Shown piece after piece: positions 22,221-54,282 of a DNA stretch of 64,000 bases. Origin of the DNA: Octopus bimaculoides (Eukaryota); assembly GCF_001194135.2 (NCBI RefSeq), contig NC_069003.1, positions 25,598,399 through 25,662,398 of the forward strand, read 5' to 3'. Positions within the stretch are counted from its first letter, which is position 1, and each line of letters opens with the position of its first letter. A program made the translations under genes and the position numbers. The notes below the pieces were generated by a model, which made no database searches, was not told the DNA's origin, and worked only from the letters and a program-made list of their open reading frames with translations.

Positions 22221-22312
22221 ATTGGTCATCATTCCACCATGTTCTTCAACATCTCTGGTAAGACGGGCCACGTCTAGAGCTTTCTTCTTGCCCAAAACTT
22301 GGACAACTTTCT
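22221..22312 (-). CDS. PHAX: PHAX exon 3
   Basis: (E)KVVQVLGKKKALDVARLTRDVEEHGGMMTN resembles human RVVRIIGNKKAIELLMETAEVEQNGG; CAG / GTGAGT; phases 1 in, 0 out. Confidence 0.92.
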
Positions 22313-22790: not shown

Positions 22791-22848
<58 letters not shown>

Positions 22849-23447
22849 CATCATCGTTTAACGTCCGCTTTCCATGCTAGCATGGGTTGGACGATTTGAC
22901 TGAGGACTAGTGAAACCGGATGGCAACACCAGGCTCCAATCTAATTTGGCAGAGTTTCTACAGCTGGATGCCCTTCCTAACGCCAACCACTCAGAGAGTG
23001 TAGTGGGTGCTTNNNNNNNNNNNNNNNNNNNNNNNNNNNNNNNNNNNNNNNNNNNNNNNNNNNNNNNNNNNNNNNNNNNNNNNNNNNNNNNNNNNNNNNN
23101 NNNNNNNNNNNNNNNNNNNNNNNNNNNNNNNNNNNNNNNNNNNNNNNNNNNNNNNNNNNNNNNNNNNNNNNNNNNNNNNNNNNNNNNNNNNNNNNNNNNN
23201 NNNNNNNNNNNNNNNNNNNNNNNNNNNNNNNNNNNNNNNNNNNNNNNNNNNNNNNNNNNNNNNNNNNNNNNNNNNNNNNNNNNNNNNNNNNNNNNNNNNN
23301 NNNNNNNNNNNNNNNNNNNNNNNNNNNNNNNNNNNNNNNNNNNNNNNNNNNNNNNNNNNNNNNNNNNNNNNNNNNNNNNNNNNNNNNNNNNNNNNNNNNN
23401 NNNNNNNNNNNNNNNNNNNNNNNNNNNNNNNNNNNNNNNNNNNNNNN

Positions 23448-23500
<53 letters not shown>

Positions 23501-25071
23501 GACATTCACATACATACATATATACATCTTCAAGTATGTAGTTTTGTCCTACCTATGTTCTGAGTTCAAATCCTCTCAGAATTGATATCAAACATGTAAT
23601 TAGTTGATTTAATTAACATGACCCCCACCAGCACAGCCACTACTATCACTACCACCACCACCTCTTCACTAGAAATTTATGTAACATTATGCTGATTATT
23701 AGATATAATATTTCAATCCATGATAGAATACAAAGCCACAAATTTTTAAATACCAAATACACCATCAAGGTATGACTGTGTATGTGGATAAGATGTTCAT
23801 TTTGTAACCATGTTGTTCTGGGTTTGATTCTACTGCATGGCACTCTGGTGAAGGGCTTTCTATCAGAGCCTAACCAGAGGTTAACCACTACGAGTTGGAA
23901 CTGGTAAGTAAAAACTAGATAAGACATGAGCGTTTATAGGTGAATGTTGTGTCCTCGCATTCATAAAAGTGCACATTTTTTATTTGCAGTTGCATATCAA
24001 TGGGGGAAAACCCAAAATATGATGCCTCTGAAATAAGTTTCCTATGATATTTGTTCTGTGCTGAGTAACAGACACTCCTTTGCCATTCTCATTGTCAGAC
24101 AAGCATGTACCAGTCATTTGGTCCACTGAAAACTTGTCATCAATGACATTATTGTTTACCAACAGTGAAATAATCAAATAAATATAAAATGCAATCATCA
24201 TCAACATCATCATCATCATCATCATCATTTAACGTCCGCTTTCCATGCTAGCATGGGTTGGACGATTTGACTGAGGACTGGTGAACCAGGTGGCTACACC
24301 AGGCTCCAGTCTGATTTGGCATGGCTTTTACAGCTGGATGCCCTTCCTAACGCCAACATAAAATATAATAAATGATATCTATGTGAAGTCTAACTGATAC
24401 AGCCTTTAACACTTTAGCATTCAGATTATGTGATGCTTATTTATTCACGTTATTTTCAATTACTTATGCATTATATGATCGGTGAGAGAGAGAGAAAGTT
24501 TCATAAATACAGAATATATTTTTAACAAGTTGAAAGAACGAAAGGAAAAATATATTCTGTATTTATGAAACTTTCTCTCTCTCTCTTGCTCTCTATGTGA
24601 TGTCCTTTCGTTCTTTCAACTTGTTAAAAATATATTCTGTATTTATGAAACTTTCTCTCNNNNNNNNNNNNCTCTCTCTCTCTCTCTCTCTCGGTCACCG
24701 ACCATCGCTTTCTTTCTTTCTTTCTTTGTCTAAAGGTCAGTGGTGCTTTCCATCCCTCTCTCAGAACAGCTTGAGTCAGTGGTGATGCCAAGCAGGCAAG
24801 CAATTTCACGGAAAAGGCTGAAGGCCGATTAGATGCAAATAAAACCCATGTGCTTGGCATTTCCTCACATCAAATCGAAAGATAGCCATTCACGTTATTT
24901 TCAATTACTCATGCATTATCTTTTTGTGCTGAGATTTTGATGATGTGCTTGTATATTTTTAGTAGGGTAGGTGTGAGAAGCTGAATATGGCCAGTTAGTA
25001 CATAAAACAAATATATTTGGGCCGGACATGGCTGATTTAAATGCTAAAGGGTTAATAAATAGATATCTTAC

Positions 25072-25780
25072 CTATGAGGTACACTTTTGATTCTTCAAGA
25101 AAATTAGCAATGGCTTCTGTAATTTTTTCATCATCATCATCATCAGCTGTGACATCAAAAGCCTTCCTGCATGACTTCTTGTCATTTGGTTTCGGACCGA
25201 GACGCTTTTTGGCACTGCGCCTTCTTTTCTCAGCTTTTCTATACACTCCATTGAAGTTCTCTTCAAGTTTTTCTAAATCAGGGACACTATCAAACAGGTC
25301 ATCATTTTTCTTGCTGGTCGTCACAGAATCAATGTCTGGTTTCACTGGCCAAGGCCGGGTGTCTTTCAGAGCCTTTTTGTAGCTGTAAGATTCTACCTGC
25401 CGATCACTGTAACTGTCGCCTTTGTGCTCCATGTCAAATCCGTGGAAACCTTGAGACAACATCTGTGATTGTAATACAGAACCCCAAATATTCTTATTTT
25501 TCTTTGGTTTGCTACTAGTGTTAGAATCTGTGACATCCTGGCCAAAGGAAAACTGCGTATTGTGTACTTGGAAAGTGTAGTTCTTGTTAATAGAATTGCT
25601 GAAACTATACTCCATAGAACTCTGCTGGTCTTTTGAAGCAATACCATACCGTTTCTTTTTCCAGGTAAACTTTTCATCATCGCTGTCATCTGAACTTGAT
25701 GCAATCTTTGCATCTGATTTGCAGCGATAGGACGTGGGGTTCACTGGCTTTCTGTAATTCTGAGAAATGGTTGATGATGT
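25072..25780 (-). CDS. PHAX: PHAX exon 2 (709 bp)
   Basis: SSDDSDDEKFTWKKKR, NKNIWGSVLQ, RQVESYSY, KRRRSAKKRLG motifs match PHAX; CAG / GTAAGA. Confidence 0.92.
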
Positions 25781-27214
25781 CTGTAACAGAAAACGAGCAA
25801 ATCATTCTTAATAAATAACATTGTGCAACAAGATTTTTGTCCTTGGGTAGCAACTGTTATTTCCTATTTGCTTTTACTCCTAGTAAGTATGAAAAATGGC
25901 TAATATTTCTTTCAAATGGGAAATATAAAAGAAAAAAAAAAACGTTTTCAAAATAGTCAATATTTTTGTAGTTCAAAAACTGTGATTTATGACATAAAAT
26001 GTCCTCTAGAATTAGCCAGGGATAATAACAACAAGCTTTAACTACTAAATATTGTTAAACACACCTCTGCAAATACAATGTACATAAGCAATTCACTTTA
26101 AATACAACGAACAACTGTCAGTGAGACTGTTTTTAGCAGATCCACAAATAGGGTTCATGGCAGGCAATGGGTTAAACAAGGAACGAAACACTGGATAATT
26201 GAGTCTTACCTAACCTTAAAAAGGTGGGATGGTTATAGTTGGAATGCCTTTGATTATAGGTTTGGCTGATCAAACTTGACCAAGGGTTAAACAACAACCT
26301 CTCCTTAAGACTGTACAAAAGTTCTTTCATTGATGGCAAGGTCAAAATTGGATCATCAGTTAGTGTGGTCAAATGGTAAGATTAATCCATTGTCCAGTTT
26401 AACACCACAGTAGAGTCCACTACAAGAATTCAGGCTAGGTGTCTGGTCTGTGGTAAGTTGCACTACTCCCTGAATCAATTGTGGGGTTTTTTTTTCCTCT
26501 CTGAAATACCTCTTCTCCCATCAGTGTCAGACACAAATCTAATGGATGCTGCCTTTCGTCCACTTTCATAAATTACAACAAAAATGTTTTGTAAATTGGC
26601 TTACATAAGATGGTCGAGACTTCTAAACACCATACTCCTTTTACTACTCTCTTTCTGACAATATTTTTTCATACAAGTCAGACACAAGACACACGCACAA
26701 AAAAGTAACCCGGACAGTTCACAAAGTACAGTATACACCCAGTTTGTCAGTCTACCCTATACAATTATCAATAGCAGGCTGGAATATGTATTATACTTCT
26801 AACCTACGTACAGGCACGTTCGAATAATAATAGATCTGTGGATCACACTTAGGCATGTATGGCATGGGTCCGCTTTATCAGCTGATTTGGTAGGGGTTGG
26901 ATACACAAGAGAACAGAATAACTTACACTACAGTTTGAAAATCACAAAAAGGAAAATTAATCTGCAGGGTTTATCTATCTATCTGTGTGTGTATTACTTG
27001 GTATTGTTGATCAACTTGTTGAAACCAATAAAAAAATTACTGATGGTGGGACTCAAATTTCGTGGAACAAAAGTTTTGGTTTTATTGGGTCTTCCAAGTT
27101 TCGACTATAACGGTTTATTCAAGTAGACGGATTGAATAAGCCGTTAAAGGGGAAACTCGTAGTCCTGGCCGAATCAACGTGTGTGTGTGTGTATATACAT
27201 ACATACGCAGCCAC

Positions 27215-27258
<44 letters not shown>

Positions 27259-28172
27259 TCTGCAAATGTATATTTGAAAATTTATACCTTCGATAGATAG
27301 AACCAAGTTTGACAGGAAAGTGAGACGTTCATGCTTTTTCTAAATAAATAAAAGATTATACAAACGCAAACACACATGCAAGGTATAACAGTACTGTAAC
27401 TGTAAGGAATGTAAAAATGATGATACACAAGAACAAAAATACATTTAACAGGAATAAAACATTTATTACTCAGATGCAATTAAGCCTGTAAGTTTTGATC
27501 AAAGATTAACAATCTGCAAAAAGTTTTAGAAATTATTTTTTTTAATAATAATCATTTTGTTTAAATCAGAAATTGGTAAGTAAGACTGGGGAGTTTACAA
27601 TTGTTTTTATTTTTTAAACGTATCTACCTAACGAATATTGAAACTACTTTTATTTTCGCTATATATGTATTTGCGTCTGCAGTGGTGTGTGAACATAAAT
27701 TGTGTAAGTGTTCGTACATTTTCAACCTTAATTAACTGAAACATCATTTAAAAATTTTCTGGAAACGAAACAGTTTAATATTAATTATTCATCGAAGACT
27801 GATGAAAATGGAAATGATATTTAAAAAAGAAATAATGAAGTTCGAGGTTGTTTGTTAACAATATATATCGATATAGTTGTAAAATGAAAAGAATTATTGT
27901 TTTATATGAATTTTACAGGCATTAATGAATAATAGGAAGACTATAAATAGGATAATTTCTCATTTAAAATAATTTTATAGTTTCATAAACATAGTTTTGG
28001 TAGGGATTAATTTCCCCAGTTAAACTACCATTAAGTCTTAACATAATCACGCACCACTTCAATGGGAGGAACTGTTCACGTTAAAAAAACATAGAAAATG
28101 TGCAATAATAACGACAACCATAATAATTTGTAAAGACACGGATATAAGAAGACTGTTATAAACCCTGATTAC

Positions 28173-28247
28173 CTGGATATTTGACGAGGCTTCATTATCA
28201 GAATCAGAATCTAACAATTCACCGTCTTCCAGTTCCAATGCCGCCAT
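28173..28247 (-). CDS. PHAX: PHAX exon 1
   Basis: MAALELEDGELLDSDSD resembles human MALEVGDMEDGQLSDSDSD; GTAATC donor, phase 0. Confidence 0.92.
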
Positions 28248-32164: not shown

Positions 32165-32383
32165 CTATTTATAAACACAAGAATAATATTCGTCTTCAAG
32201 TTCATAAAGTTCAGTGGCCATGTCATCTCGTAAAGTTAGTAACTTTGTGTCCAGTTCGCTCTGTTTCTGTTTGTATAGTTTTGTGTTCTGACCAATGACA
32301 TCATTCACCGATGGGAAGTCGTTTAAGATGAGAAACTGCTTGAGATCTGATACGAGCTTCATGAGGGACTCTCCAGCACGAAC
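32165..32383 (-). CDS. MED22: MED22 coding exon 3
   Basis: [27 protein letters not shown] is identical to human MED22; ends [14 protein letters not shown]. Confidence 0.97.
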
Positions 32384-33601
32384 CTGTCCATATGTGGAAT
32401 AGAAAGGAAGACAAATGAAACCAGGTGAGCTGATAGCCAAATAATTAGAAGTGTGTGTGTGTGCATCTAATTCTATTTTATCTTTTATCTGTTTCAGTCA
32501 TTAGACAGTGGCCATGCTGGGGCACCACCATGAAGAGTTTTTGGCCAAACAAAACAAACCTCAATGCCATTAAAAAAAAAAGCCTGGTACTTATTCTATC
32601 AGTCTCTTTTGCCAAACTGCTATGTTATATGGATGTAAACAAACTGGCATTGGTTGTCAAGCAGTAGTAGGGGACAAACACTGATACATAGACACCATCA
32701 AATACACACACATTTATATATACACATACACATGACAGATTTCTTTCAGTTTATGTCTACAGATCCACTCACAAGACTTTGGTTTGCCTGAGGCTATTGA
32801 GATGCAAACTTCTTACCAAACAGTTACAAACGCATGCATGTCTATCTAGGAATACATCATCAAATATAAGTACAGGTATGTATGCAACATCAGCTGAATG
32901 GTTAAGAACTTCTCTTCACAATCACAAAGTCCTTGGTTCAACTGCAGTGTATGGCACCTTGGGCAAGGGTCATTTATAATGTCCACAGGCTGACCCAAGC
33001 TTTGTCTATGAAATTGGATAGATAGAAACTGTGTAGAATCTCACTGGTTGGATTATACCTGTAGTACACTCTCATCACCTTAATGAAATTCTCAATCTGA
33101 ATTCTGATTCAGGTTGTGGATTTCATAAAGGGTACATGTGTCACTTAAATGATAATTTAATGACAGATAAAACAATTGATCAAACATTTGATATGTGTTG
33201 TCTAAATTGACAGTGATCTTATTGTCTTTACATTATTAAATATTGGAGTTGTTTAGCCCAAGGACAGCTTGGACCAAGTTTATCTCTCATTTAGACCAGT
33301 GGTCCTCAACTGGGATCATATGGACTTTGGGGGTTCACATAAGATTTTGTTGTTAAAATTTATGTGAGCTGAAATCCGTTATACTTCTACCATGCACAAA
33401 ATATTTTGACATTTTTTAAATACAATCCTTAATATTTAATTATAAAGATATAGTAGGGTTATTTTAAACATTGAATGGCTATGAGGGTCCATCTGAGTAA
33501 AATAGGAATCAAAGGGGTCCATAGGAAAAATGGTGTATCTAAGATTGACTTGAGAGAGAGAGAAAGAAAGAGAGAAGCAATGCCTCTTCACTACGACTTA
33601 C

Positions 33602-33682
33602 AATATTTGAAGCACGGACTTGCATCTCATATTGATCTTGTTCTGCTTGAGTCATCCTTGAGATTTGTGTATCGTCTTCCAC
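33602..33682 (-). CDS. MED22: MED22 coding exon 2 (81 bp)
   Basis: VEDDTQISRMTQAEQDQYEMQVRASNI resembles human IEDETQVSRATQGEQDNYEMHVRAANI; CAG / GTAAGT. Confidence 0.97.
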
Positions 33683-36600
33683 CTGAGACACAAAAAAAAA
33701 AAACCCCATTAATTACAAGACGTAAAGAAATATTTTTCATTTTCCTATCACTGTCATTGAAAGACAATTAACCAAAGTCATCTGTTCTTTATCTGAAAAT
33801 GCAGACCTATGGATCAAGAACAATCCAGCCATGAACAACCTGTCTTTTGGTTGTCATGTTGTTAATCAGGTCTTATGTAGAACTATGCTATCCAGCCTGT
33901 CTACTTTTAACCCTATGGTATTTAACCCAGCCATATCAGGCTAAAATATTCCACCTGTTTTATGTTAAAAATTGCCAGCAATTTTTTATTTAATTTCGTT
34001 TGTAAAATAATCTTTTGTTTTTAATAATACTTCTCTATTAAGACCACAATTTACTTCAGTCAACAGGGCAAATATATATTCGAGGTTCAGTCTCACTGCA
34101 TGGCACCTTGGGTCAGGTGTCATCTACATATATATATATATATATATAAATATTCAATATATATATTTATCAAAAGATAAACAATCACATCTCCAAAATC
34201 TCAATAATCTGAATGCTAAAGGGTTAAAGGCTGTATATAGAGTGATTTGAAGGAGATTTGGCAGCTATTCCTATCATGTCAAGTAACTTTAGATACCCTG
34301 CGACTTTGATACTCTATAGGTTGGGGGTAACCAAAAGGTTGTGACCTTCATACCTTTCTATAAAGCATGAATACAGAATTGAAAGTTGGTCAGTCAGAAT
34401 TTAGGCCAAGTGCTCACACTCTGTCACAGAAAAGGTATTGTATAAGAATGGTATGCATCTGTTGTTTCTGACAATGTGATAAAAAAAAAAAATGGGAGAG
34501 AGTATTTTATCAGAACTGCTTTAAGCTGTTATGAGTAGTCCTTGCACTTATGAAGGGGTTTCTCTCACCCAGGTTTCCCTGCTTCAGAGGAAAAGCAAAG
34601 CCACTATGTCTGAGAGAGATAACAAGGTACAGGGGTTAGCAATGTTAAGCCATGTTGCTGGCTTCATTGCTTACGGCCCAACCATGAAACAGGCGATACT
34701 TTATTTTCAGAGTTGATGAAAAATACTGATGCTATCATCATCATTGGCAACACTAACTTGTATCCAGGTTGTTAATTTGTAGTGAGTGATTGTGCCTCTT
34801 CATCTTGATGGGTGTGGAGGATGCTGGTGTCTGAGGTGGCTGTTCAGGCTAAGGGCAGTATAGAAGAGCCAAGGGAATCTATCACAGGGTAGGGGTTGAC
34901 AGGGGACAAAGAAATGTGAGTCACTCTTTGTGTCTTTGATGTCTGTTATTTTCCATTTGGTCCATTCCCTTAACTATGGCATGCTGCCAATTTGGGGGAT
35001 GTTATAGAGAACAGATTAATTACAAGTTTTTTATTTAATTAAAAACAATAAAATTATTTCATTTAATCATTTAACATTTTTTCCATACATTGAAAATAAA
35101 AACTGATTCTACATTCTTTTTGTTTTTCACTTATTGGGCTATGGCCATGCTGGGGTGTTATTGATCTCTGTTTGTTGAAGTGTTAAGTTACGATAAGTAA
35201 AGGGGAACATGACATAAACACACAAAGGTTTGGTGGTTATAATGAGAGAAATAGAACTCAATATGCAAAATAGAGCACATAAAGAAATAAACACACACAC
35301 ACACACACCTCATTGGTGCTGGTATGACATAAAAAGCACCCAGTCCACTCTGTAAAGTGGTCGGCATTAGGAAGGGCATCTACCCATAAAAACCATGTGG
35401 AGCTTGATGCAGTCCCCTGGCTTGCCAGCTCCTGTCAAACTGTCCAACCCACACCAGCATGGAAGACAGATGTTAAATAATGATGATAATGATGATTGCA
35501 TGTTTTCCACACAATTTCTGTCTATCAAATTCAACTCACACGTTATTGGTTAGCCCAATAATTCAATAGTCTATATGCACACACAGACAGACATACACAT
35601 ATGTTCAAAACATTTAAGGTGTAAAATGTAGTCATTAATTTCAGCAAATTAAGTCATCAATAAAAATTAACATGCTTTGTTAGTCACCAGTTAGTAGGTA
35701 GCTGAACCAATGATGACAGTGGACAGTGGAGTTAGTTAGGTAGTGGACAGAGGAGTCAGTTTTATCTAACCAATAGACTTTGTGGCTTGTGTTGACCATT
35801 ACACTGTAACACGATTTCTGTCTTTGGGTAGCAACTGTTATTTCCTATTTGCTTACCCCTAGAAAGTATGAAAAATGGCTAATATTTCCTTCAAACTTTG
35901 CTTTTGTTACTTTTATTCAAATCCCAAAGAATCCCCTTCAACACATGGCTATGATACTTCCCCACTACTCCTGCTCATGATCAGAAATGCATGTCCCACT
36001 AAGGAACATACTCAAGTGGTTATGGTCAAGCAATTGACATGCAAATCTGTGGTATTGAACAGAATATTTGGTATAATGATATCTCTGCTTCAGCAATTCA
36101 GTGCTGAATTTGTCTGAAATGTAATGGAGAACAGGTCAGTTTTAAGACATTGATGTCCAGGTGACAAAAGCAAAGTTTGAAGGGAATAGTTGCCATTTCT
36201 TTTGATTTCCAGGTAGAAGCATATAGGAAATAATACTTACTGACCAACGACAGAAACAAAAAATTTTGTTACACAGTGTTAGCGAAGCAGTAAACAATGC
36301 AGTGAGAGTTAGTTGTGTCAGTCCAGTGTTAACTGGTCAGTAAAGCCACCGAAGCAGTGACTGGTGTGAACCCTGAACACACAGTATTGGTCCCATCAAT
36401 CTTAGACAAGACACTGGGCCAAGACAGTACCAAAAATACTAAACCCCACACTAACCCACCCAGTCCATTGCTTAAAACTACCAGCACCTCCATAACAACC
36501 CACCCTGCACCTATGAGAAAGGTAAACCAGGTGATAAGAAAGCCTTAATCTTGTAGCATTTAAACTGGCCATATCCGGCCCAAATATTCTATCTGTTTTG

Positions 36601-37807
36601 TGTTCAAACCAGCCAGTGATCTGGTCTCTCACACCTACCCTATAATGTTATTCTAAAATTATACAATTACATTATTGAAATGTCAAAGCTACAAAGTTAA
36701 TGCATGATTAATTCAAAACAGTGTGAATAAATAAGCATTACATGTTACACAGTAAGCTGAATGCTAAAGGGTTAAGCATGCGACTTACAACCCAGACACC
36801 CACCTATCTCTGTCCCTCATCATCATTGGTGGTTCTATAACACTAACAGATGGACTAAATAAACAAAAAAAATACCCCCCCCCCTCATACAATAAAAACG
36901 AAAGTGAAACAACAACAACAACAACAAAAGCTATGGAGATATTTAATGATAGTTTGCAAAATAATTTCACAAATGAGAATAAAAATAAATAAATACATCC
37001 TACTGAGTGGAGGGGTTAATCTTTTTAATTGTAGTTAGGGATATGTCAGTTTAAAGGAAGCACATAGCTTAGTGGTTAAGGTGTTGGACTCATGATTGTA
37101 AAATTGTGGTTTCAATTCCTGGACTGGGTGATGCATTGTGTTCTTGAGCAAAACACTTCATTTCATGTTGCTCTCGTCCACTCAGCTGGCAAAAATTAGT
37201 AACGCTGCGATGGACTGGTGTCCCAGCTTGGAAGGAATATACATGTCACAGAAACTGGGGCCCTATGCTCCTTGTAGACTAAATAGCCAACTCCCTCCCA
37301 ACCGGTCTAAAGGAGTTGATACCCTGCAGGGTTATATCCAACTGCAGTAGAGTTTGAGCTCAGTACTTGTTGGTTATAAAACATTGCCACATCACCTACT
37401 TAGTAGTGAGTTGCACTATCATAAATTACAAGGTACCTACTTAGAGGAAGGTGGACTGTACCTCCCCATGGTTCTCAATCATACATTTTAGGTGAGGTAA
37501 CAAGAGAACCACTTTGTTGTCACTTGCTCTGCTAAAAATAGCGACCAAATTTCCTACCAAGAGGACACATAATATAATCTACTCTTAGACTCCTCCTGCC
37601 ACAAAGAAAGATGGGATGGTTGCGACAAGAGTGTCTTTGACTGAAGGTTTGCTTGTCCATGACTGACTTGGGGTAAAAACCACACCAACCCATAACCCCC
37701 TAGATATACTACACTTCACCATGGTACCTATGTATAGCAATGTGTGTTACAGTTCCTCATGATACCTAGGTAGGCTGCAAATCATCATGGTATGTAGTTA
37801 CAGTTAT

Positions 37808-37962
37808 ATTGGTTTCAAATTTTGGCACGAAATCAATCAATTTTGGGGGAAGGGTCAAGTCAGTTATGTTGACCTCGGTGGAATTTGAACTCAGAAAGTA
37901 AAGACAGATGAAATGCCACTAAGCATTTTGCCCAGCATGCTTACAATTCTGCCAGCTCGCTA
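37808..37962 (-). mobile_element. tRNA-derived SINE (family C), representative copy
   Basis: GAGCTGGCAGAAT..GCTTAG..GAGTTCAAAT head on the minus strand; similar copies at 1365-1550, 7155-7360, 31405-31600, 31950-32090, 59540-59700. Confidence 0.7.
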
Positions 37963-38061
37963 CTTTAGTTACAGTTATATTGACAACAACTTCTTGTGGT
38001 ATCTACTTATGAGTTAGGTGGACTGCACTTTATCATGGTACCTCTTTTCAGACAGACTGAA

Positions 38062-38513
38062 ATCTATTAATGCTGTGCCAGTGGAGCACTAACAGCACCG
38101 TCCGAGCGTGATCATTGTCAGAGCTGGCTTCTGTGCCAGTGGCACGTAAATAGCGCCATTTGAGCGTGATCGTTACCAGCGTCGCCTTACTGGCACTTGT
38201 GCCGGTGGCACATTAGAAAACATTCGAGCGAGGTTGTTGCCAAACCTGCTGGACTGGCTCCTGTGCAGGTAGCATGTAAAAAACACCATTTTGAGTGTGG
38301 CTGTTGCCAGTACCGCCTGACTAGCCCTCGTGCCGGTGGCACGTAAAAGCACCCACTACACTCTCAGAGTGGTTGGCGTTAGGAAGGGCATCCAGCTGTT
38401 GAAACTCTGCCAGATCAGATTGGAGTCTGGTGCAGCCATCCAGTTCGCCAGTCCTCAGTCAAATCGTCCAACCCATGCTAGCATGGAAAGCGGACGTTAA
38501 ACGATGATGATGA
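38062..38513 (+). mobile_element. SINE-like element (family A) with five ~64-bp internal repeats and a GGACGTTAAA(CGATGAT)n tail
   Basis: Repeat units start at 38075, 38133, 38199, 38263 and 38330; the 3' part recurs at 1575-1765, 5800-6025, 20200-20420, 35310-35495 (+) and 1-100, 22849-23012, 24207-24357, 61403-61600, 63817-64000 (-). Confidence 0.8.
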
Positions 38514-39228
38514 TTATGTAGGTGGACCTTACAGTGATTAAAGTTAGAAGGGTAGCACATCCCATGGTACTTATTTATAGTCAGAAAAGCAGTTTCTTCT
38601 TACAACATCTATTTCACATTAAGATGAATTTGTTCTGTTTTGGGCCCTTAACTCCTCATAAGGTCATAGAGGTGTTATTGTAAAATATGGGTGTGCCATC
38701 AGCAATTAAAAACCTGATGGGGCCTATCCCTCTCCAGATCTGACCACAGTAAATTTCTTTTAGAAAGAGAGAAGAATCAACATCTGAACTTGACTGGTAC
38801 TCTGTTGACCCCAAAAGGATGAAAGGTAAAGCTAACTTCAGTGGGATTTGAACTCAGAGTACAGAGAGCTGGAATGTGGATGAACAAAAGCAAGAATTAA
38901 GTGTATTTGGTTATGAGTAGTATACTAGTAATAGTAGTGAGAAGGCCACAAATGATGGCACCTCTCAACAGTTAGATGGTCTTGGCTACAAAGAATGAAA
39001 TGTCCTTTGGTCACAAACAGCAGTGGTGGTGGTGGTGGNNNNNNNNNNNNNNNNNNNNNNNNNNNNNNNNNNNNNNNNGGGGGGGGGGGGCAAGGAAGTT
39101 GGAAATCTTAATGGAAATAAAATGAAGAAACAGAAGAGAAGAGAACACGATAACATTTCACAGACAACACCAGACAAATATCAAACATGAAGAGAATGGA
39201 AGAATTTTAAACACACAATTCTACAAAC

Positions 39229-39357
39229 CCGAGCTAGTTTGATAATCTCTCGAAAGTTATCAACCATTGATTTCACGTCATCTTTCAGGCGTTTATTGTA
39301 GGATCTGAGCAGAGCTTCTTTGCTTTGGGGTAAAACTCTTTGAGGGTGTGCCGACAT
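39229..39357 (-). CDS. MED22: MED22 coding exon 1 (exon starts at acceptor 39388)
   Basis: [43 protein letters not shown] resembles human [33 protein letters not shown]; cttctctcag acceptor, GTTTGT donor. Confidence 0.96.
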
Positions 39358-39729
39358 AATTATATGTTCATGTGGTAATTAAGATAATCTGAGAGAAGAG
39401 GAAAAAAAAACAAAACAAAAAACAATAAATGAAATATCTGAGACGAGTCATTAAAAAAATATTATAATTAATCAAGAGCGTTGTAGAATAATGAAAGAAA
39501 TGAGAAATAAGGAAAGCTTTTAACAAAGCAGAAATTTTTAAAAATCTTTGGCGCAAAGGCATATGATCCGAAGGGTAGCTGCTGCTACTAACACAGACAC
39601 CGGACTACCCGAAATGGCAGTATCTATATAATAAATCAATATTTCTTTGACTGTAGTTTTCTGAAGATAGGTCTTTGTGCCTGAATTATTAAGTTTTTTT
39701 AAAAAACTTTCTGCACTATTAGAAGCTTC

Positions 39730-39930
39730 CCTTACTGTCAAGGTATTGGTTGCTCTCCAACAGGTTTATGGTTGAGTCTGTGGCAGTGGAAATCTCTGGC
39801 ATTCTTGGCCCCTGGACCATATCCCTGCTCACTGCTATCAAAGCAGAGATGGCTGTCTGCAAGTGCAAGCCCTGTGGGGCAACACCTTTTCCATTTCGTC
39901 TGCTGGGGGCCATGAGAAGAGTTTCTTAAT
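39730..39930 (+). mobile_element. Possible non-LTR retrotransposon C-terminal fragment in MED22 intron
   Basis: VESVAVEISGILGPWTISLL resembles the P.AVET.G..GP motif of RLE-type LINEs; short and degenerate. Confidence 0.3.
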
Positions 39931-40662
39931 AAAGATATATAAACAAGAATAAATAAATAAATTTTTAAAAAATGATTAAGAATTTCTCATTTCATTCATT
40001 ATTCTGCTACTCTTATAATTTATTTTTTAATTATTAATCTCATCTTAAGACATAAATCAACATCATTATTTCCTGCTTAGGAAATCACAGTACTCGGGTT
40101 GTCAAAACAATGAAGATATGGAGTGAACGAATCACTTCAGTAATAAATTACTTAAATTGATATTTTTACTTCTACTTTTAATGGTATTAAAGTTCAATAA
40201 CAGAAAAATACAACTGAGGGGGTTTTTGTCCTATTTCACACTTAGGGGGTTTATTCCTAGGAGAATTTTGTCTGGATCCCAGTTTATGATTATATTCACT
40301 GGAGATAATAATAATTTGTTGGCAACTCCAGGTCTGCCCTGATATATACTTTTTCGTTTCCAGGGACTCAACGAAATAAAAATGTTTACCTTGTCAAAAG
40401 TGGAGCTGAAAGTGTTTTCTTTTGCAAAAATGTAAAAACTGTTTTCCTAGAAAATGAAATTATATTAATTCTTTAGCATTCAGATTATTCATTCTTGGTT
40501 TGTTGAATTAATCTTGCATTACCTCATAACTTCGAGATTTCAATGATGTGATTCTTTATTTTTAGAACGAGATCGCAGGACAGGTGTGAGAGGCTGAATC
40601 TAATCACTTTGAACATAAAACATAGAAATTTGGGCCTGATATTACCTGTTTAAATGCTAAAG

Positions 40663-40956
40663 CAGTGATTCCCAACGTGGGACATATACCCCACCGGTGG
40701 GGCCTGATGCCATAGTCAAACCCTTTAGTTTGACCGTTCTCATTAAAGGGATTCACTTTTTTTTTTATATTAGTCAATGAGGTACATTTTTGGGGGACTC
40801 AGTACTTAAAAGCGTTACCGGTAGATTCTCTAGTATTTAAATAATTGTGATAAAGTATCAAAATTAAGTTTTTTTTTTCAACCACCGGTGGGGGTATACA
40901 TTTTCCTGGAACGTTGTAGTGGGGTCTGGGGTGGTGGAATAGGTTGGGAAACACTG
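40663..40956. mobile_element. hAT MITE nested in a piggyBac-type MITE end
   Basis: TIRs CAGTGATTCCCAAC / GTTGGGAAACACTG; TSD tgctaaag / tgctaagg. Confidence 0.8.
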
Positions 40957-41604
40957 TGCTAAGGGAATGTCTGTCAACTTAACGCGTGATTATTAAAAAC
41001 ATCTTTTTCCTCAAAATTATGGACTACATCTTCGCATACAATTAGTCTCATATTCAATGGAGTTTGATGCATTTTGCATTTCCTAAAGATGGTACTGAAA
41101 AATTATGGACAGATATTAGATCCTTTCATTACTTGATTTAAATAAATAAAAATGTGCATTTTTCAACCAAGGAAAACAAGTTCATTTTTGACAATGGGAC
41201 CTTGGAAATGGACCATGCCCAACGATCTAGTATACTTGTGATTAAAAGCGTTCCGACTGCGATCATCCCGGCTTTCTTAAATTTAGGTATAGTATATTTA
41301 GGAGTATAATATCCAAACATGTCCTCTCTTTTTTAACGATAGTTGAATGTGATTTGGCTGCTATTTCTGCAGTCTCCTTGATGGATCACTAATCTGATTG
41401 CTTAAATGTTTCATCACAACCAATTTTGACAACCCAGGCATTATAAAATCGACAGAGTGGTCACGGATTTTATCCGTCACATAAAACAATGCTTTTAAGC
41501 TTAAGAACACGCATATAATTTATATATATATATGGGGAGAGAGAGAGAGGGGGGGGAATAAATTACTGATAGATATAAGTATATTATAAACACCGAATAC
41601 TTAC

Positions 41605-41700
41605 AAATAGTGACAACCCTCGAAGTTCAGGTCTTCTAAGGAAACACCGGTTTGTAAAGGTTTTAATGGGTTTCAAAATATTTTTGTTGTTGACATATCC
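41605..41700 (-). other. MED22: Probable non-coding first exon of MED22 (5' end approximate)
   Basis: GTAAGT donor at 41604 on the minus strand; CATTTCCGCCGG motif near 41700; the next exon begins with an acceptor, so an upstream exon is required. Confidence 0.55.
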
Positions 41701-41895
41701 GGCGGAAATGAGGATGTAGTTAGTTTCGATGTAATTATTGATAAAATAATGGTATAAGTATAAAATAATATTTTAAATAGGAAATTAAGATTATATGACG
41801 TGATTAAATTTCTAATATCTAAAATACATTCTATTAATATTATTTGCAATAATATAATAGGGCTGTTTGTAAAAATTACATATACGATATTCCTG

Positions 41896-41935
<40 letters not shown>

Positions 41936-42100
41936 ATTTAGGTTTATTTATACTAAATAATATCATGCAATAATAACTTTTATTTCATTTCTTTTTTTTA
42001 ACATAATTTCTGCCTTGTAGTAATTTGTTTATACGGAAATGTGGCTTCAGAATAATCTAGTAAGGTAGCTTTATTTAATTCGGCCACCTATCGGCCTTTT
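41700..42100. promoter_or_regulatory. Bidirectional MED22/RPL7A promoter with TCT initiator (5'TOP)
   Basis: cCTTTTT at 42095-42101 fits the TCT motif of ribosomal protein genes, 21 nt before the ATG; CGGAAATG (ETS-like) at 41703 and 42034; (TA)n near 41898-41931. Confidence 0.65.
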
Positions 42101-42116
42101 TAGCTTAGGACTCATC

Positions 42117-42119
42117 ATG
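42117..42119 (+). CDS. RPL7A: RPL7A exon 1 (coding part is the ATG only)
   Basis: ctcatcATG|GTAAGT after a TCT motif; same ATG-only first exon as vertebrate RPL7A. Confidence 0.85.
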
Positions 42120-42546
42120 GTAAGTCATCGTGTCATTTGATTGTATTTTGTAATCGCTAAACATCTATATTTATTTCAACTTTAAATCAAGCATCAAATA
42201 TGTATTTTGTATCTTGTAAGAGTCTACTACATATACGAAGAGATATTTTGTAAAAAATATTGTATATTTTTGTGAATTTAATTGCAAAAAAATTTGGTAA
42301 GCTGTGCTTTTTCTTCATCCATTTTACAATTTCTCTTGTTACTTTTTATTTTAAGGTGGAGTTTAGTAATTATTGGATTAATTTTAATTATTCTAAAAGA
42401 ATTACCATCTCAGAAAAAAAAAAAAAACGTTATTTGTGTGTCCTTATATAATGTGTGGCTGTATATATATATATATATATTAGAATTATGTGTGCACGTG
42501 TATATCCACTCCAGTCCTCAATGCTAATCCCTGTATATTTATGATG

Positions 42547-42577
<31 letters not shown>

Positions 42578-44372
42578 GTGAATGTAAAATATATTTTTAT
42601 AATTCTATACTTTATAATATTTTTGAAGTTGATCAAGGCCTTGACCGAGCGGTCCATTAATTTATTCCTAAAAAATGGAAAGATTTATGTCGGCAAGATT
42701 TGAATTCAAAGCATATAGGGACGTAACTTAAATACGGAAAGTGTTTAAGTAAAAAGACAAAAATTTTTGTAAAATGTAAATCGGCAAAATATATTTATCC
42801 TAAACGCGAGAAATAAACGAATTTGAGTAGAATCAATTGTCAAGTTGCAGGTTCTGATGAGGGCTTCCCTTAGGCATTGTAGAATATCTATATCGAAAAG
42901 AAGGCCTTCCGGCGATCTTACGGTACGAGTCCTAAATATCGGCCTTTTCCGTAAAAAGTGTCTTCGGCGATCTTTACCAAAGATCGGCTCTAAAATATCT
43001 ATATCGAAAAGAAGGCCTTCCCCGATGTCCATCTGTTAAATCTGTGAAGCTTTTTCAAGTGTCAATGGAAACAATTTGCTTGCCCTTTTTTGATAAGCTT
43101 TCTGATAATGTCCTTAAATATATTCACATTAAGTTTCCTGTATACACACGCACACCACACGTGTCCGGTGTTATCCTAACCGCCGAAAACGGGTGGTGTG
43201 CGTATTCTTTATCTTCGCCATCTTAAAGTAACACTTGTTAAGCAGTGGCAGGACAGCCGTGTATATACAACGGGCTTCTACACATTTTCGGAATTCACTT
43301 AGAAGGTATTAATTGGTCCGAGGCTATAGTAGTTGTCCAAGGTGTCGCACATTGGGGCTGTACTCAAAACCACATGGTTTCGAAGCGAAATTTTTAATCA
43401 GTCATACCTGCACCTATATGTGTTTGACGATATAGAGTATATAAACTAGGGCTTCCTTACTCAGTAAAACGTCTGAGCCATTGTATGACTACATGAAATC
43501 ACAATGGGAGAACGTAGTCCTTGAGAACTTTGCCACAACTGGAACGCCATGAAATTTGTTCGATCAGGGCTGATGTTATATCTAACAATTTGTCTATCCT
43601 CTGAAGATTTACGGTACTTCATTATTTGATAGAAGCCAATGTTTTGTGTAGAAGAGTGGCTGGCAGCAAAAATATCCAAACACTTATTCCGCTAATTTTT
43701 TCTCTCTTAGTTCCTGGGAGAAATCAAACATTTTTATTTTTCAATATATGTCCAAGTGTGTGTGTATGGGTTACTTAAGGTCCAGTATTTATATTGTACC
43801 TCAGTTGCGGATTTAAGACAGTCGTCAGATGGATGCTTTTATCCCTCAGGGGTCGATAAAATATAAGGATCAGTCATGTGTTGTGATCTCTAGAGCTGAA
43901 TAGAAGCGTGATAGGATAATTAATTCATTGATATTTTGATTTTATGTCTTGTACAATGATCTAATTAGAAATATACATTCAACGTCCGTTTTCCATGCTG
44001 GCATGGTTTGGACGAAGAGGATTCGAGTGGTAGCTTTTCTACGGCCAAATGCCCCTTATGATGCTCCCTTCCATGTTCCCAAGTAGGAAATTATTATTCT
44101 AATTATAAATTACATTATCATTTGTCATAAAGTTTGCTTCATATTAATTTACATTAGCAAGTGATTGTCTTTCCAAAGTAGTAAACATTCTCAGAAATGG
44201 TTGGAAGTTGCAAAAAATGACATGTCTTGGGTAGAAATGAAGTGCTCCATGTAGCAATGTAGAGGAGAGGGTTAATGTAGTACTGGTAGGGATAGGGAAG
44301 AAGTAAGTGATGAAAATGTTTTTCAGCAATGTACTATACTTGAGATCATTGATTTGTTCTAAACAAACAATT

Positions 44373-44436
44373 GACTATGATGACACTTGTTGGATATGTG
44401 ATTGTCTGTGAAATCGATCCCTTGGCTGTCTGAGTC
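44373..44436 (+). ncRNA. Box C/D snoRNA, SNORD53(U53)-like, copy A (RPL7A intron 1)
   Basis: GACT/AGTC stem, ATGATGA, CTGA; D guide TCCCTTGGCTGT is complementary to LSU ACAGCCAAGGGA, and the +5 rule gives the human Cm3848-equivalent C. Confidence 0.85.
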
Positions 44437-44848
44437 CACCTTATTTCACCTTATGNNNNNNNNNNNNNNNNNNNNNNNNNNNNNNNNNNNNNNNNNNNNN
44501 NNNNNNNNNNNNNNNNNNNNNNNNNNNNNNNNNNNNNNNNNNNNNNNNNNNNNNNNNNNNNNNNNNNNNNNNNNNNNNNNNNNNNNNNNNNNNNNNNNNN
44601 NNNNNNNNNNNNNNNNNNNNNNNNNNNNNNNNNNNNNNNNNNNNNNNNNNNNNNNNNNNNNNNNNNNNNNNNNNNNNNNNNNNNNNNNNNNNNNNNNNNN
44701 NNNNNNNNNNNNNNNNNNNNNNNNNNNNNNNNNNNNNNNNNNNNNNNNNNNNNNNNNNNNNNNNNNNNNNNNNNNNNNNNNNNNNNNNNNNNNNNNNNNN
44801 NNNNNNNNNNNNNNNNNNNNNNNNNNNNNNNNNNNNNNNNNNNNNNNN

Positions 44849-44965
44849 GCCACCGCTACAACAGAAAATAGTATTAATTGGCTTAAGAGACATGGACTTT
44901 TAAATACCCCAAAAATATGCCCCTCGTGTGGAGCTAGCATGATGGAAGTAGCCAAAAAGTTTTTT
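44849..44965 (+). mobile_element. Merlin/ISXO2-like transposase N-terminal fragment
   Basis: SINWLKRHGLLNTPKICPSCGASM, typical WL..GLL....CP.CG..M zinc-ribbon start. Confidence 0.55.
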
Positions 44966-45276
44966 TTTTTCTAATTTGATAAATTCTACGGAAACAAACG
45001 AAGGTGGACGAGTGATAGAGAGATAGACAGACAGATAGATAGATAGCTCCGGCCAGTCAGTAGCCAAAGAAACAGATTTCAACTCAAACCAGCAGTAACA
45101 TTCCTTGTTTAGATTTTTCTACTTTCGCTTCTGACAGCTAATACCATGACAGTGCCGTGCTCCATGTAGCAATGTAGAGGAGAGTACTGGTAGGGATAGG
45201 GAAGAAGTAAGTGATGAAAATGTTTTTCAGCAATGTACAATACTTGAGATCATTGATTTGTTCTAAACAAACAATT

Positions 45277-45340
45277 GACTATGATGACACTTGTTGGATA
45301 TGTGATTGTCTGTGAAATCGATCCCTTGGCTGTCTGAGTC
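45277..45340 (+). ncRNA. SNORD53-like C/D snoRNA, copy B (intron 1)
   Basis: Body identical to copy A; flanks differ (11-nt deletion, substitutions). Confidence 0.8.
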
Positions 45341-46084
45341 CACGTTATCTCACCTTATGATGCCCCCCCCCTCGTGTTCCCAAGTAGGAAATGTTTTCCG
45401 TCCTATCTAGTGAGACAAGCTCTCTAACCACACAACTATATGTGTGTAAAAAATCCGATCCTGCGGAAGGCACCTTTGAGGAGCCTGGCCGTTTCGTGGC
45501 CCTGTACCCTTGTGCAATGAAACTTATTTCTGCAAATGTGCGAAGTCCTGATGCTGATCATAGTTTAATCAATGAGCGTAGGAGCGGGGTAAATGCAGTA
45601 AAAATAAGGTGGGGTGGGGATCAGTGGGACTCCATTTCAGCAACCCTTCAGAAATTGAACGTCATTACGACACTCTCTGGGAGTTCATGGTACGAAATTC
45701 ATTGTCATTGCTTCGATTTGGTTTAAAAAATGCAGTAAAAATAGGGAGTTCAGTGGGGCCCCTGGGATTAGGAGAGTTGCTGGTTTGAGTGTTGTCCTTG
45801 CACCAACGGTCTCGGAGTTAACGGACATAAAAACGTAACTGACAGAAACATCACTCAAATTTAAATTAAGATAGAGGGTAATTCTTCAGGGTTGTGTCCC
45901 TTCATTTTTTTTTTTTACACACTTGTAAACTGAACAATTAACTATATATATATATGAGGGGGTTTAGATTTAGACAAGATTTATTGGTGAAAGCAGTTGT
46001 CAAGCACATCAGGTTTTGAAATACAGAATTTTGTGATTAAATTTTCAATTAGAATTCACATTTCTTCATTTGCATCTCCTGCAG

Positions 46085-46202
46085 CCTAAATTCAAGAAAG
46101 GAAAAAAGAAGTTGCCACCAGTTCCTACTGTTGCTAGGAAGGTGGAACCAAAGAAAGTGGTCAACCCACTGTTTGAGAAAAGACCAAAGAACTTTGGTAT
46201 TG
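46085..46202 (+). CDS. RPL7A: RPL7A exon 2
   Basis: [40 protein letters not shown]; CAG / GTGAGT. Confidence 0.97.
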
Positions 46203-47915: not shown

Positions 47916-48038
47916 CAAGCATGTAGCAATGTAGAGGAGAGGGTTAATGTAGTACTGATAGGGAAGAAGTAAGTGATGAAAATGTATTTCAGCATTGTAC
48001 AATACTTGAGATCATTGATTTGTTCTAAACAAACGATT

Positions 48039-52706: not shown

Positions 52707-52856
52707 GTCAAGATATCCAACCCAAGAGGGATCTAACACGTTTTGTAAAATGGCCCCGTTACGTGAAGATCCAAAGGCAAAGGGCTGTTCTTTATAAACG
52801 CCTCAAAGTTCCACCACCAATCAATCAGTTTAGGCAGAATCTTAGCAAAGATTTAG
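52707..52856 (+). CDS. RPL7A: RPL7A exon 3 (150 bp)
   Basis: [41 protein letters not shown]. Confidence 0.98.
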
Positions 52857-54061: not shown

Positions 54062-54282
54062 CAACTCAGATGTTTAAACTTCTGGACAAATATCGTCCAG
54101 AAACCAAGCATCAGAAAAGAGCACGTTTAAGGGCTCGTGCCGAGAAACGAGCTGCAGGTAAAACAGATACACCAACAAAACGCCCCCCTGTTGTTAGGTC
54201 TGGAGCCAATACTGTGACCAGCCTTATAGAACAGAAAGCAGCCCAATTAGTTGTCATTGCTCATGATGTTGATCCCATTGAG
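54062..54282 (+). CDS. RPL7A: RPL7A exon 4 (221 bp)
   Basis: [16 protein letters not shown]...[14 protein letters not shown]; CAG / GTAGGT. Confidence 0.98.

What the first reader, a model, noticed from the sequence alone, without database searches (positions are those of the whole stretch)
32165..46202. MED22 (Surf-5) and RPL7A (Surf-3) head-to-head: a Surfeit-locus core in a mollusc
Seen: MED22 on minus and RPL7A on plus, with first exons about 400 bp apart. Known: mammals have this divergent pair in the Surfeit cluster, whose genes are dispersed in Drosophila. Inference: the pair may be an ancestral bilaterian bidirectional unit rather than an amniote feature. PHAX, not SURF6, follows MED22 here, so only the core is kept.
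Basis: partly seen in the sequence, partly recalled or inferred. Interest (0 to 1): 0.75.

Follow-up and report, generated by a model that had tools for sequence, protein, structure and literature searches.

The report
Octopus MED22–RPL7A divergent gene pair
The octopus genes MED22 and RPL7A lie back-to-back as in the vertebrate Surfeit locus, and this pairing is found in most animal phyla sampled, but their first coding exons are about 2.8 kb apart here, not 400 bp.

Summary
The window is Octopus bimaculoides chromosome CM046623.1. MED22 (minus strand, 3 coding exons, 39357→32165) and RPL7A (plus strand) are real, adjacent and divergent, and PHAX follows MED22.

The "400 bp" spacing is wrong. 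It rests on a chance ATG|GTTGAG at 39768, which is a poor splice donor and is lost in O. sinensis. The real first coding exon of RPL7A is a TOP-like CCTTTTT plus an ATG-only exon at 42117–42119. The start codons are therefore 2,760 bp apart (4,311 bp in O. sinensis).

Both flagged gaps are intronic. A gap-free, collinear O. sinensis assembly bridges them, so a misjoin is excluded.

The same divergent pair occurs in a gastropod, a bivalve, a chiton, a nemertean, a brachiopod, a hemichordate (with SURF1 alongside, as in vertebrates), a starfish and insect-like contigs. Start codons there are mostly 0.4–1.2 kb apart. The pair is absent within 10 kb in one annelid and one scorpion. The ancestral-bilaterian reading is supported.

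Whether octopus still uses one shared promoter is unknown, because the MED22 transcription start is not defined. This is a solid but modest result: one more ancient conserved head-to-head pair.

The parts
39229..39357 (-). MED22 first coding exon (ATG at 39357; donor CGG|gtttgt; an alternative donor 12 nt further on gives isoform X1)
33602..33682 (-). MED22 coding exon 2
32165..32383 (-). MED22 coding exon 3, including the stop codon
39389..39409 (-). Polypyrimidine tract plus CAG, an acceptor-like site 31 nt upstream of the MED22 ATG. It suggests an upstream non-coding MED22 exon. A 3-codon uORF (ATGAACATATAA) lies in the leader.
   Evidence: Similar acceptor-like sites lie 12-90 nt upstream of the MED22 ATG in 8 of 9 other species. 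This is inference only; there is no transcript evidence.
39358..42116 (.). Spacer between the two start codons (2,759 bp). It holds one SINE-like repeat at 40484-40662 and an (AT)17 run at 41898-41931.
39768..39770 (+).
42095..42119 (+). RPL7A exon 1: a TOP-like CCTTTTT start, a 5'UTR of about 22 nt and the ATG only (42117-42119), then GTAAGT
46085..46202 (+). RPL7A exon 2
52707..52856 (+). RPL7A exon 3
54062..54282 (+). RPL7A exon 4
58920..59050 (+). RPL7A exon 5
60227..60296 (+). RPL7A exon 6
61050..61183 (+). Assembly gap that hides the last RPL7A coding exon
39039..39078 (.). Assembly gap inside MED22 intron 1; its flanks abut in O. sinensis
44456..44848 (.). Assembly gap inside RPL7A intron 1, flanked by near-identical snoRNA-like units. 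The flanks are collinear with the gap-free O. sinensis locus.
58730..58798 (+). SNORD36 C/D-box snoRNA in RPL7A intron 4
17217..28247 (-). PHAX, downstream of MED22 on the same strand (CDS start at 28247)

Best explanation
This is a real, inherited head-to-head gene pair, the invertebrate counterpart of the RPL7A(Surf3)/MED22(Surf5) core of the vertebrate Surfeit locus.

Shown:
- Both genes are intact orthologues, adjacent and divergent.
- RPL7A starts with a TOP-type leader and an ATG-only first coding exon at 42095-42119.
- MED22's ATG exon lies 2.76 kb away.
- The same arrangement occurs across Spiralia, Ambulacraria, vertebrates and insect-like contigs, usually with only 0.4-1.2 kb between start codons.

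Inferred:
- The bilaterian ancestor had the two 5' ends in one short promoter region of about 0.4 kb.
- The pair persisted because a break there is both a small target and likely to damage one or both housekeeping promoters.
- In octopuses the spacer was stretched to 2.8-4.3 kb, in keeping with their enlarged introns, without separating the genes.
- MED22 probably has a short non-coding first exon and a 5'UTR intron. The stretched DNA may therefore be that intron, with the two transcription starts still close together near 42.1 kb. This is not shown.
For: Gene identity.

Adjacency and orientation in the annotated chromosome.

Real RPL7A exon 1.

No misjoin: the gap-free O. sinensis locus is collinear from MED22 intron 1 to RPL7A exon 3.

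Cross-phylum survey. There are no gaps in those spacers, and the MED22 and RPL7A exons were re-found by tblastn. Adjacent locus tags in Sinanodonta and Solemya, and same-contig hints in Pinctada, Tubulanus and H. rubra, add to this. Twelve metagenome contigs carry the divergent pair, eight of them insect-like.

Vertebrate arrangement SURF1-> <-RPL7A MED22->: PMC5377540 Table 1 and the Garson 1995 title.

Acceptor-like site upstream of the MED22 ATG in most species.

CpG o/e is about 1 to 1.4 around 41.6-43.3 kb against a window mean of 0.40.
Against: - The octopus start codons are 2.76 kb apart, beyond the usual limit of under 1 kb for bidirectional promoters.
- A second patch that is not CpG-depleted sits at 39.2-39.7 kb. 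About 0.9 kb of CpG-depleted DNA separates it from the RPL7A patch. This fits two separate promoters equally well.
- No convincing donor for a non-coding MED22 exon was found near 42 kb.
- No transcript, CAGE or chromatin data were available.
- The pair is absent within 10 kb in Paralvinella and Centruroides and, from the literature, in Drosophila and C. elegans. It can therefore be lost.
- No transcription-factor motif shared across phyla was found.
Confidence: 0.85

Rival explanations
1. The adjacency is an assembly artefact: a scaffold misjoin at one of the gaps brought two unlinked genes together.
For: Two N gaps lie inside the finding, at 39039-39078 and 44456-44848. The second sits between RPL7A exon 1 and exon 2. 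It is flanked by 98%-identical 177-bp duplicates, and the sequence to its right (44849-45150) has no O. sinensis counterpart.
Against: The independent, gap-free O. sinensis assembly has the same genes in the same order and orientation, with collinear flanks across both gap positions. MED22 exon 1 and RPL7A exon 1 lie in one uninterrupted stretch, 39079-44455. The same adjacency occurs in at least eight other species.
Confidence: 0.02
2. The pair is real and inherited, but octopus no longer has (or never had) a shared bidirectional promoter. MED22 starts just upstream of its ATG at about 39.4-39.6 kb, RPL7A starts at about 42.1 kb, and the two have separate promoters about 2.5 kb apart.
For: The start codons are 2,760 bp apart. 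There are two separate patches that are not CpG-depleted, 39.2-39.7 kb and 40.8-43.5 kb, with depleted DNA and a SINE-like repeat between them. No good donor for an upstream MED22 exon was found.
Against: A strong polypyrimidine+CAG acceptor-like site lies 31 nt upstream of the MED22 ATG, and similar sites occur in 8 of 9 other species. This argues for an upstream non-coding exon whose position is unknown. The CpG counts are small, 6-7 per 300 bp.
Confidence: 0.45
3. The deep conservation is passive. A spacer of about 400 bp is simply a very small target for rearrangement, so the pair persists without any functional coupling or co-regulation.
For: The spacers are very short in most phyla, 383-1,207 bp. 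No cis motif shared across phyla was found. The pair has been lost in some lineages without obvious consequence (Drosophila and C. elegans from the literature).
Against: The pair survived in octopuses and in Solemya after the spacer grew to 2.8-4.3 kb. By published accounts octopus genomes are heavily rearranged; this rests on my own knowledge and was not tested here. Irimia et al. 2012 found 5'-5' pairs enriched among conserved microsyntenic pairs and attributed this to regulatory constraint.
Confidence: 0.4
4. The arrangement arose independently (by convergence) in molluscs and vertebrates.
For: None beyond the patchy distribution: it is absent in the sampled annelid and scorpion, and in fly and worm.
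Against: The two genes, their orientation, the three-coding-exon MED22 layout and the ATG-only RPL7A exon 1 are the same in nine lineages spanning Spiralia, Ambulacraria and vertebrates. A hemichordate also keeps SURF1 in the vertebrate position. Chance adjacency of two specified genes is roughly 1 in 10,000 or less per lineage.
Confidence: 0.02

Closest known systems
Vertebrate Surfeit locus (SURF4, SURF2, SURF1, RPL7A/Surf3, MED22/Surf5, SURF6)
   Same: RPL7A and MED22 are transcribed divergently from adjacent 5' ends (PMC5377540 Table 1; Garson 1995 title). RPL7A exon 1 ends at the ATG. RPL7A hosts SNORD36.
   Different: Only the two-gene core is present in the octopus window. PHAX, not SURF6, follows MED22. 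No SURF1 lies in the 2.8 kb left in the window after RPL7A, nor within 10 kb downstream in O. sinensis. The start codons are 2.76 kb apart, whereas the mouse 5' ends are about 0.16 kb apart (my recollection of Garson 1995).
Conserved ancestral microsyntenic pairs (CAMPs) of Irimia et al. 2012, e.g. HSPD1-HSPE1
   Same: This is a head-to-head housekeeping pair kept across protostomes and deuterostomes, mostly with very short spacers. That is the class the paper describes as enriched and attributes to shared regulation.
   Different: I could not check whether MED22-RPL7A is already in their list, because the supplement is not held. Co-expression was not tested here.
Ribosomal-protein genes as intronic snoRNA hosts (human RPL7A hosting SNORD24 and SNORD36A/B/C)
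   Same: SNORD36 lies in an octopus RPL7A intron. SNORD24 and SNORD36 lie in RPL7A introns of Haliotis, Liolophura, Lineus and Lingula; Glandiceps and Acanthaster gave SNORD36 only. The human host relation is given in PMC3511933.
   Different: The octopus SNORD24-like hit is below threshold (28.8 bits against 41). Octopus introns 1-2 carry several extra, partly duplicated C/D-like units.

Membership tests
MED22 (Mediator subunit 22 / Surf-5) | Full-length match to Pfam Med22 (PF06179) and to solved MED22 chains | tested here: met
   124.7 bits against a cut-off of 26. PDB MED22 chains match at E=1e-57. The translation is 100% identical to RefSeq O. bimaculoides MED22 X2.
RPL7A / eL8 (Surf-3) | Ribosomal_L7Ae domain plus full-length similarity to eL8 of solved ribosomes; an intron-containing gene, not a retrocopy | tested here: met
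   PF01248 at 80.6 bits. eL8 chains match at E of 1e-149 to 1e-107 over residues 1-231. Six coding exons are found in the window, and the last one is hidden in a gap.
Vertebrate-type Surfeit locus | RPL7A and MED22 adjacent and divergently transcribed | tested here: met
Vertebrate-type Surfeit locus | 5' ends of RPL7A and MED22 within a few hundred bp | tested here: inconclusive
   The start codons are 2,760 bp apart. The MED22 TSS is unknown, and a possible upstream non-coding exon was not located.
Vertebrate-type Surfeit locus | SURF6 downstream of MED22 | tested here: not met
   PHAX (PF10258) follows MED22.
Vertebrate-type Surfeit locus | SURF1 tail-to-tail with RPL7A, then SURF2 and SURF4 | tested here: not met
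   tblastx with the Glandiceps SURF1 segment found nothing in window 61-64 kb or in the 10 kb downstream of O. sinensis RPL7A. Sensitivity is limited, and sequence beyond 64 kb could not be read. SURF1 is in the vertebrate position in Glandiceps.
Bidirectional (head-to-head) promoter pair | Opposite strands with TSSs less than 1 kb apart | not testable with these tools
   This needs CAGE or RNA-seq. The orientation criterion is met. On start-codon distance the criterion is met in Haliotis, Lineus, Lingula, Glandiceps and Acanthaster (383-956 bp), but not in Liolophura (1,207 bp), octopus or Solemya.
Conserved ancestral microsyntenic pair (bilaterian) | The same two orthologues adjacent in both protostome and deuterostome lineages from several phyla | tested here: met
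   Mollusca (4 classes), Nemertea, Brachiopoda, Hemichordata, Echinodermata, insect-like contigs and vertebrates. Absent within 10 kb in Paralvinella and Centruroides.
RPL7A as SNORD24/SNORD36 host | SNORD36 and SNORD24 in RPL7A introns on the sense strand | tested here: inconclusive
   SNORD36 is met (36 bits against a gathering score of 30). The SNORD24-like unit at 46743-46810 scores only 28.8 against 41.

The most novel reading that the evidence does not exclude
SURF1-RPL7A-MED22 is an ancestral bilaterian, possibly older, three-gene block. Its RPL7A/MED22 junction is under real regulatory constraint: a shared promoter region that couples a Mediator head subunit to a snoRNA-hosting ribosomal-protein gene. 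That constraint would explain why the pair survived even in the heavily rearranged, repeat-expanded octopus genome. In octopus, the stretching of the spacer would have been absorbed by a MED22 5'UTR intron, leaving the two TSSs side by side near 42.1 kb.
Probability: 0.3. Interest if true: 0.55.

Novelty: new member of a known kind. Interest (0 to 1): 0.4.

Why it matters
The classical view comes from fly and worm (Armes & Fried 1996, cited). It holds that the Surfeit cluster is a vertebrate peculiarity and that its genes are dispersed in invertebrates.

The survey here shows that the RPL7A/MED22 junction predates vertebrates and is widespread in Bilateria. In a hemichordate SURF1 is kept in the vertebrate position as well. 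Flies and worms are therefore the derived cases.

This gives a clean, small test system for why some head-to-head housekeeping pairs resist rearrangement for more than 500 million years. It offers natural variation in spacer length, from 0.4 kb in Lingula and Lineus to 4.3 kb in O. sinensis, and natural losses in an annelid, a scorpion and Diptera.

It is still one example of a phenomenon described genome-wide in 2012, so the advance is incremental. On the practical side, the work corrects the O. bimaculoides RPL7A gene model. The RefSeq 5' end is partial, and the C-terminus is wrong because the last exon lies in a gap.

Tried and rejected
Rejected: poor donor, no TOP tract, and not conserved in the sister species.
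- **RefSeq partial start at 42282-42296 (LQKNL).** Rejected as coding. It has no ATG, a stop codon lies just upstream, and a 1-nt indel in O. sinensis breaks the frame.
- **Footprinting O. bimaculoides against O. sinensis to find a non-coding MED22 exon.** Uninformative. Identity is 85-98% nearly everywhere.
- **Donor-PWM scan of the minus strand, 39.4-42.7 kb.** Only one candidate scored above 5, at 40695 close to a SINE-like repeat. MED22's own exon-1 donor scores 0.16, so the scan cannot discriminate.
- **Shared transcription-factor motifs in the spacers** (ZNF143/SBS-like, ETS, YY1, DRE). An SBS-like TACCCACAATGC occurs only in Lingula and Glandiceps, and nothing is shared across phyla.
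- **SURF1 search by tblastx** in the window and all loci. Negative except in Glandiceps itself.
- **Look-up of MED22 isoform X2.** Not on record; the longer isoform X1 worked.
- **Identifying the organisms behind metagenome contigs L066 and L067** with the last homologue search. The top hits are unnamed environmental sequences.
- **Literature.** No paper in the searchable library discusses MED22-RPL7A linkage in invertebrates. The Irimia 2012 supplement and Armes & Fried 1996 are not held.
- **Cnidarians, sponges, placozoans and amphioxus.** Could not be sampled.


Full report
**Source and gene identities.** The window is 100% identical, gaps included, to Octopus bimaculoides chromosome CM046623.1 (GCA_001194135.2).

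MED22 is on the minus strand. tblastn and splice-site inspection give three coding exons: 39357-39229, 33682-33602 and 32383-32165. The 142-aa product is identical to RefSeq MED22 isoform X2. It matches Pfam Med22 at 124.7 bits and solved human MED22 chains at E=1e-57.

RPL7A is on the plus strand. Its exons are at 46085-46202, 52707-52856, 54062-54282, 58920-59050 and 60227-60296. They match Ribosomal_L7Ae and eL8 chains of solved ribosomes.

The PHAX exons are visible from 28247 down to 17217 on the minus strand.

**The gaps (tested first, as asked).** Gap 39039-39078 lies in MED22 intron 1. Its 100-nt flanks map to adjoining positions in O. sinensis (L002 5326-5420 and 5413-5511), so the gap is essentially empty.

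Gap 44456-44848 lies in RPL7A intron 1. The O. sinensis locus has no N at all. It is collinear with the window from MED22 intron 1 through RPL7A exon 3, on both sides of the gap. Only about 1.4 kb around the gap is unalignable. The first ~300 bp right of the gap is absent from O. sinensis, and near-identical repeat units flank the gap.

No reading frame crosses either gap. MED22 exon 1 and the true RPL7A exon 1 lie in one uninterrupted stretch. A misjoin is excluded.

**The spacing claim is wrong.** RPL7A exon 2 begins with codon 2 (cag|CCT AAA TTC…), so exon 1 must end exactly at ATG. Nine ATG+GT sites lie between the two genes.

It reads ATG|GTTGAG and fails on three counts:
- Its donor score is -5.1, against 3.6 to 6.2 for the five other RPL7A donors.
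- It has no pyrimidine leader.
- In O. sinensis it reads GTG|ATTGAG, so both the ATG and the GT are lost.

The site at 42117 reads cggCCTTTTTagcttaggactcatcATG|GTAAGT. It is the orthologue of the CDS start of the complete O. sinensis model, which begins MPKFKKG…. The same layout recurs in Haliotis, Solemya, Lineus, Lingula, Acanthaster and Paralvinella: a C+pyrimidine TOP-like tract 20-30 nt upstream, an ATG-only coding exon, then a GT donor.

The current O. bimaculoides RefSeq model is marked 'partial'. It starts at 42282 with LQKNL and has no ATG. A 1-nt indel in O. sinensis breaks that frame.

The start codons are therefore 2,760 bp apart in O. bimaculoides and 4,311 bp apart in O. sinensis. 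The difference is due to four insertions in O. sinensis.

**Where MED22 transcription starts is open.** A strong acceptor-like site (tttttttttcctcttctctcag|) lies 31 nt upstream of the MED22 ATG. Comparable pyrimidine+AG sites lie 12-90 nt upstream of the ATG in Haliotis, Solemya, Liolophura, Lingula, Glandiceps, Acanthaster and Centruroides. MED22 may therefore generally have a short non-coding exon 1 and a 5'UTR intron. In octopus that exon could sit next to the RPL7A TSS.

I could not locate such an exon:
- The two octopus species are 85-98% identical throughout, so conservation does not discriminate.
- A donor scan was uninformative.
- The CpG o/e profile shows two patches that are not depleted: 39.2-39.7 kb, and a broader one at 40.8-43.5 kb around RPL7A exon 1. 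Depleted DNA and a SINE-like repeat lie between them. This fits separate promoters about as well as a shared one.

**Microsynteny survey.** I used the look-up of encoding contigs on homologues. The same divergent arrangement was found in the species below. Distances are between annotated start codons.

| Species | Group | Distance (bp) |
|---|---|---|
| Haliotis rufescens | gastropod | 645 |
| Solemya velum | bivalve | 3,285 |
| Liolophura sinensis | chiton | 1,207 |
| Lineus longissimus | nemertean | 419 |
| Lingula anatina (two contigs) | brachiopod | 417 and 389 |
| Glandiceps talaboti | hemichordate | 383 |
| Acanthaster planci | starfish | 956 |

In Glandiceps the order is SURF1-> <-RPL7A MED22->. 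This is exactly the vertebrate consensus (PMC5377540 Table 1).

tblastn re-found the exons of both genes in all these loci. None of the spacers contains a gap.

A scan of metagenome contigs added twelve contigs with the divergent pair:
- Eight have MED22 84-91% identical to insect MED22s and are presumably host DNA.
- One is arthropod-like.
- One is vertebrate.
- Two are unidentified metazoans.

Two loci were negative. No MED22 lies within 10 kb of RPL7A in the annelid Paralvinella, and no RPL7A lies within 10 kb of MED22 in the scorpion Centruroides. Both loci are gap-free.

SURF6 was not seen beside MED22 in any invertebrate locus. The downstream neighbours differ from lineage to lineage.

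**Interpretation.** Two specified genes sit in the same orientation, with the same exon layouts, in lineages spanning Spiralia, Ambulacraria, vertebrates and insects. This cannot reasonably be chance or convergence. The pair was present in the bilaterian ancestor and was later lost in some lineages, including Drosophila and C. elegans according to Armes & Fried 1996 (cited; the paper itself is not held).

The short spacers in most phyla suggest an ancestral shared or tightly abutting promoter region. Conservation could reflect regulatory constraint, the explanation Irimia et al. 2012 give for the excess of 5'-5' conserved pairs. It could also reflect the small rearrangement target. The survival of the pair after the spacer grew to 2.8-4.3 kb leans mildly towards constraint. 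I found no motif shared across phyla.

**Novelty.** I found no paper in the searchable library that reports this linkage in invertebrates. Genome-wide lists of conserved pairs may contain it, but the relevant supplement is not held.

I rate it a new member of a known kind. It is a sound, modestly interesting observation that corrects an old generalisation. It is not a new kind of system.

**Side observations.**
- RPL7A is a conserved snoRNA host. SNORD36 lies in octopus intron 4, and SNORD36 also lies in RPL7A introns in six other phyla. SNORD24 accompanies it in Haliotis, Liolophura, Lineus and Lingula. Human RPL7A hosts both.
- Octopus introns 1-2 hold several further C/D-like units. Some are near-identical duplicates next to assembly gaps.
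- The last RPL7A exon falls exactly in gap 61050-61183. This explains the aberrant C-termini of both RefSeq models.

Noticed in passing
window 61050-61183: The last RPL7A coding exon (O. sinensis L002:32811-32921, about 37 aa ending QKLG) maps exactly into this assembly gap. Both O. bimaculoides RefSeq RPL7A models therefore read through into intron 6 (…FEEVSYLLLLLFFF…) and have a false C-terminus.
   Followed up: yes
window 58730-58798; L003, L005, L006, L007, L009, L010: SNORD36 sits in octopus RPL7A intron 4. SNORD36 is also found in RPL7A introns in Haliotis, Liolophura, Lineus, Lingula, Glandiceps and Acanthaster, with SNORD24 as well in the first four, as in human. This host-gene relation appears as old as the gene pair.
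   Followed up: partly
window 44372-44437, 45276-45341, 48038-48103, 51807-51874, 46743-46810, 48670-48741, 51239-51309, 52504-52633 (+): Several further snoRNA-like units lie in RPL7A introns 1-2. They have clear C (ATGATGA) and D (CTGA) boxes and terminal stems, and one H/ACA-like unit is present. All score below the Rfam gathering scores, and three are identical copies.
   Followed up: partly
window 44279-44455 vs 45183-45359 vs 47920-48115: Near-identical (94-98%) repeats of 177-200 bp containing the C/D-like unit flank gap 44456-44848. A third copy lies about 450 bp downstream of gap 47169-47476. These duplicated units probably caused the assembly breaks, or one copy is a collapsed or duplicated artefact.
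   Followed up: partly
window 44849-45150: The sequence just right of the gap has no counterpart in O. sinensis. It carries an ORF fragment (…NWLKRHGLLNTPKICPSCGASMMEV…) that looked transposase-like by eye, with no Pfam match. It could be a species-specific insertion or a misplaced piece.
   Followed up: partly
window 42282-42296: The current RefSeq RPL7A model (XP_052832069, 'partial') starts here with LQKNL, using the donor TTG|GTAAGC at 42296. This may reflect an alternative donor of a longer exon 1, but the frame is not conserved in O. sinensis.
   Followed up: partly
window 39217-39229 (-): Two MED22 donors 12 nt apart give RefSeq isoforms X2 (142 aa) and X1 (146 aa, with an extra VCRI). 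O. vulgaris is annotated with the longer form.
   Followed up: no
window 39364-39375 (-): A 3-codon upstream ORF (ATGAACATATAA) lies in the MED22 leader between the acceptor-like site and the main ATG. It is kept in O. sinensis, with AACGTA in place of AACATA.
   Followed up: no
L009 1-3932: In the hemichordate Glandiceps, SURF1 lies convergent to RPL7A, giving SURF1-> <-RPL7A MED22-> exactly as in vertebrates. The conserved Surfeit core there is three genes.
   Followed up: partly
L009 13889-21299; L010 16212-25355; L003 21475-23138; L005 17920-22722: Lineage-level neighbours differ. A SET+zf-MYND (SMYD-like) gene flanks the pair in both ambulacrarians, on opposite sides. A protein-kinase gene with a weak ARM_LRRK2 hit lies convergent to MED22 in both Haliotis and the chiton, but not in octopus.
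   Followed up: no
window 40484-40662: A SINE-like repeat lies in the MED22/RPL7A spacer. Copies at 69-75% identity occur at 19292-19474, 24887-25049, 36554-36734 and 59768-59863, and in O. sinensis introns.
   Followed up: no
window 1620-1682, 5878-5970, 61489-61551, 63909-63971: A dispersed repeat family whose translation (…RLQSDLAEFLQLDALPNANHS…) gave spurious weak MED22 tblastn hits.
   Followed up: no
L007 29-40 and L009 19-30 (RPL7A side of the spacer): A ZNF143/Staf-site-like TACCCACAATGC motif lies next to the RPL7A leader in Lingula and Glandiceps only. It is not found in octopus or the other species.
   Followed up: partly
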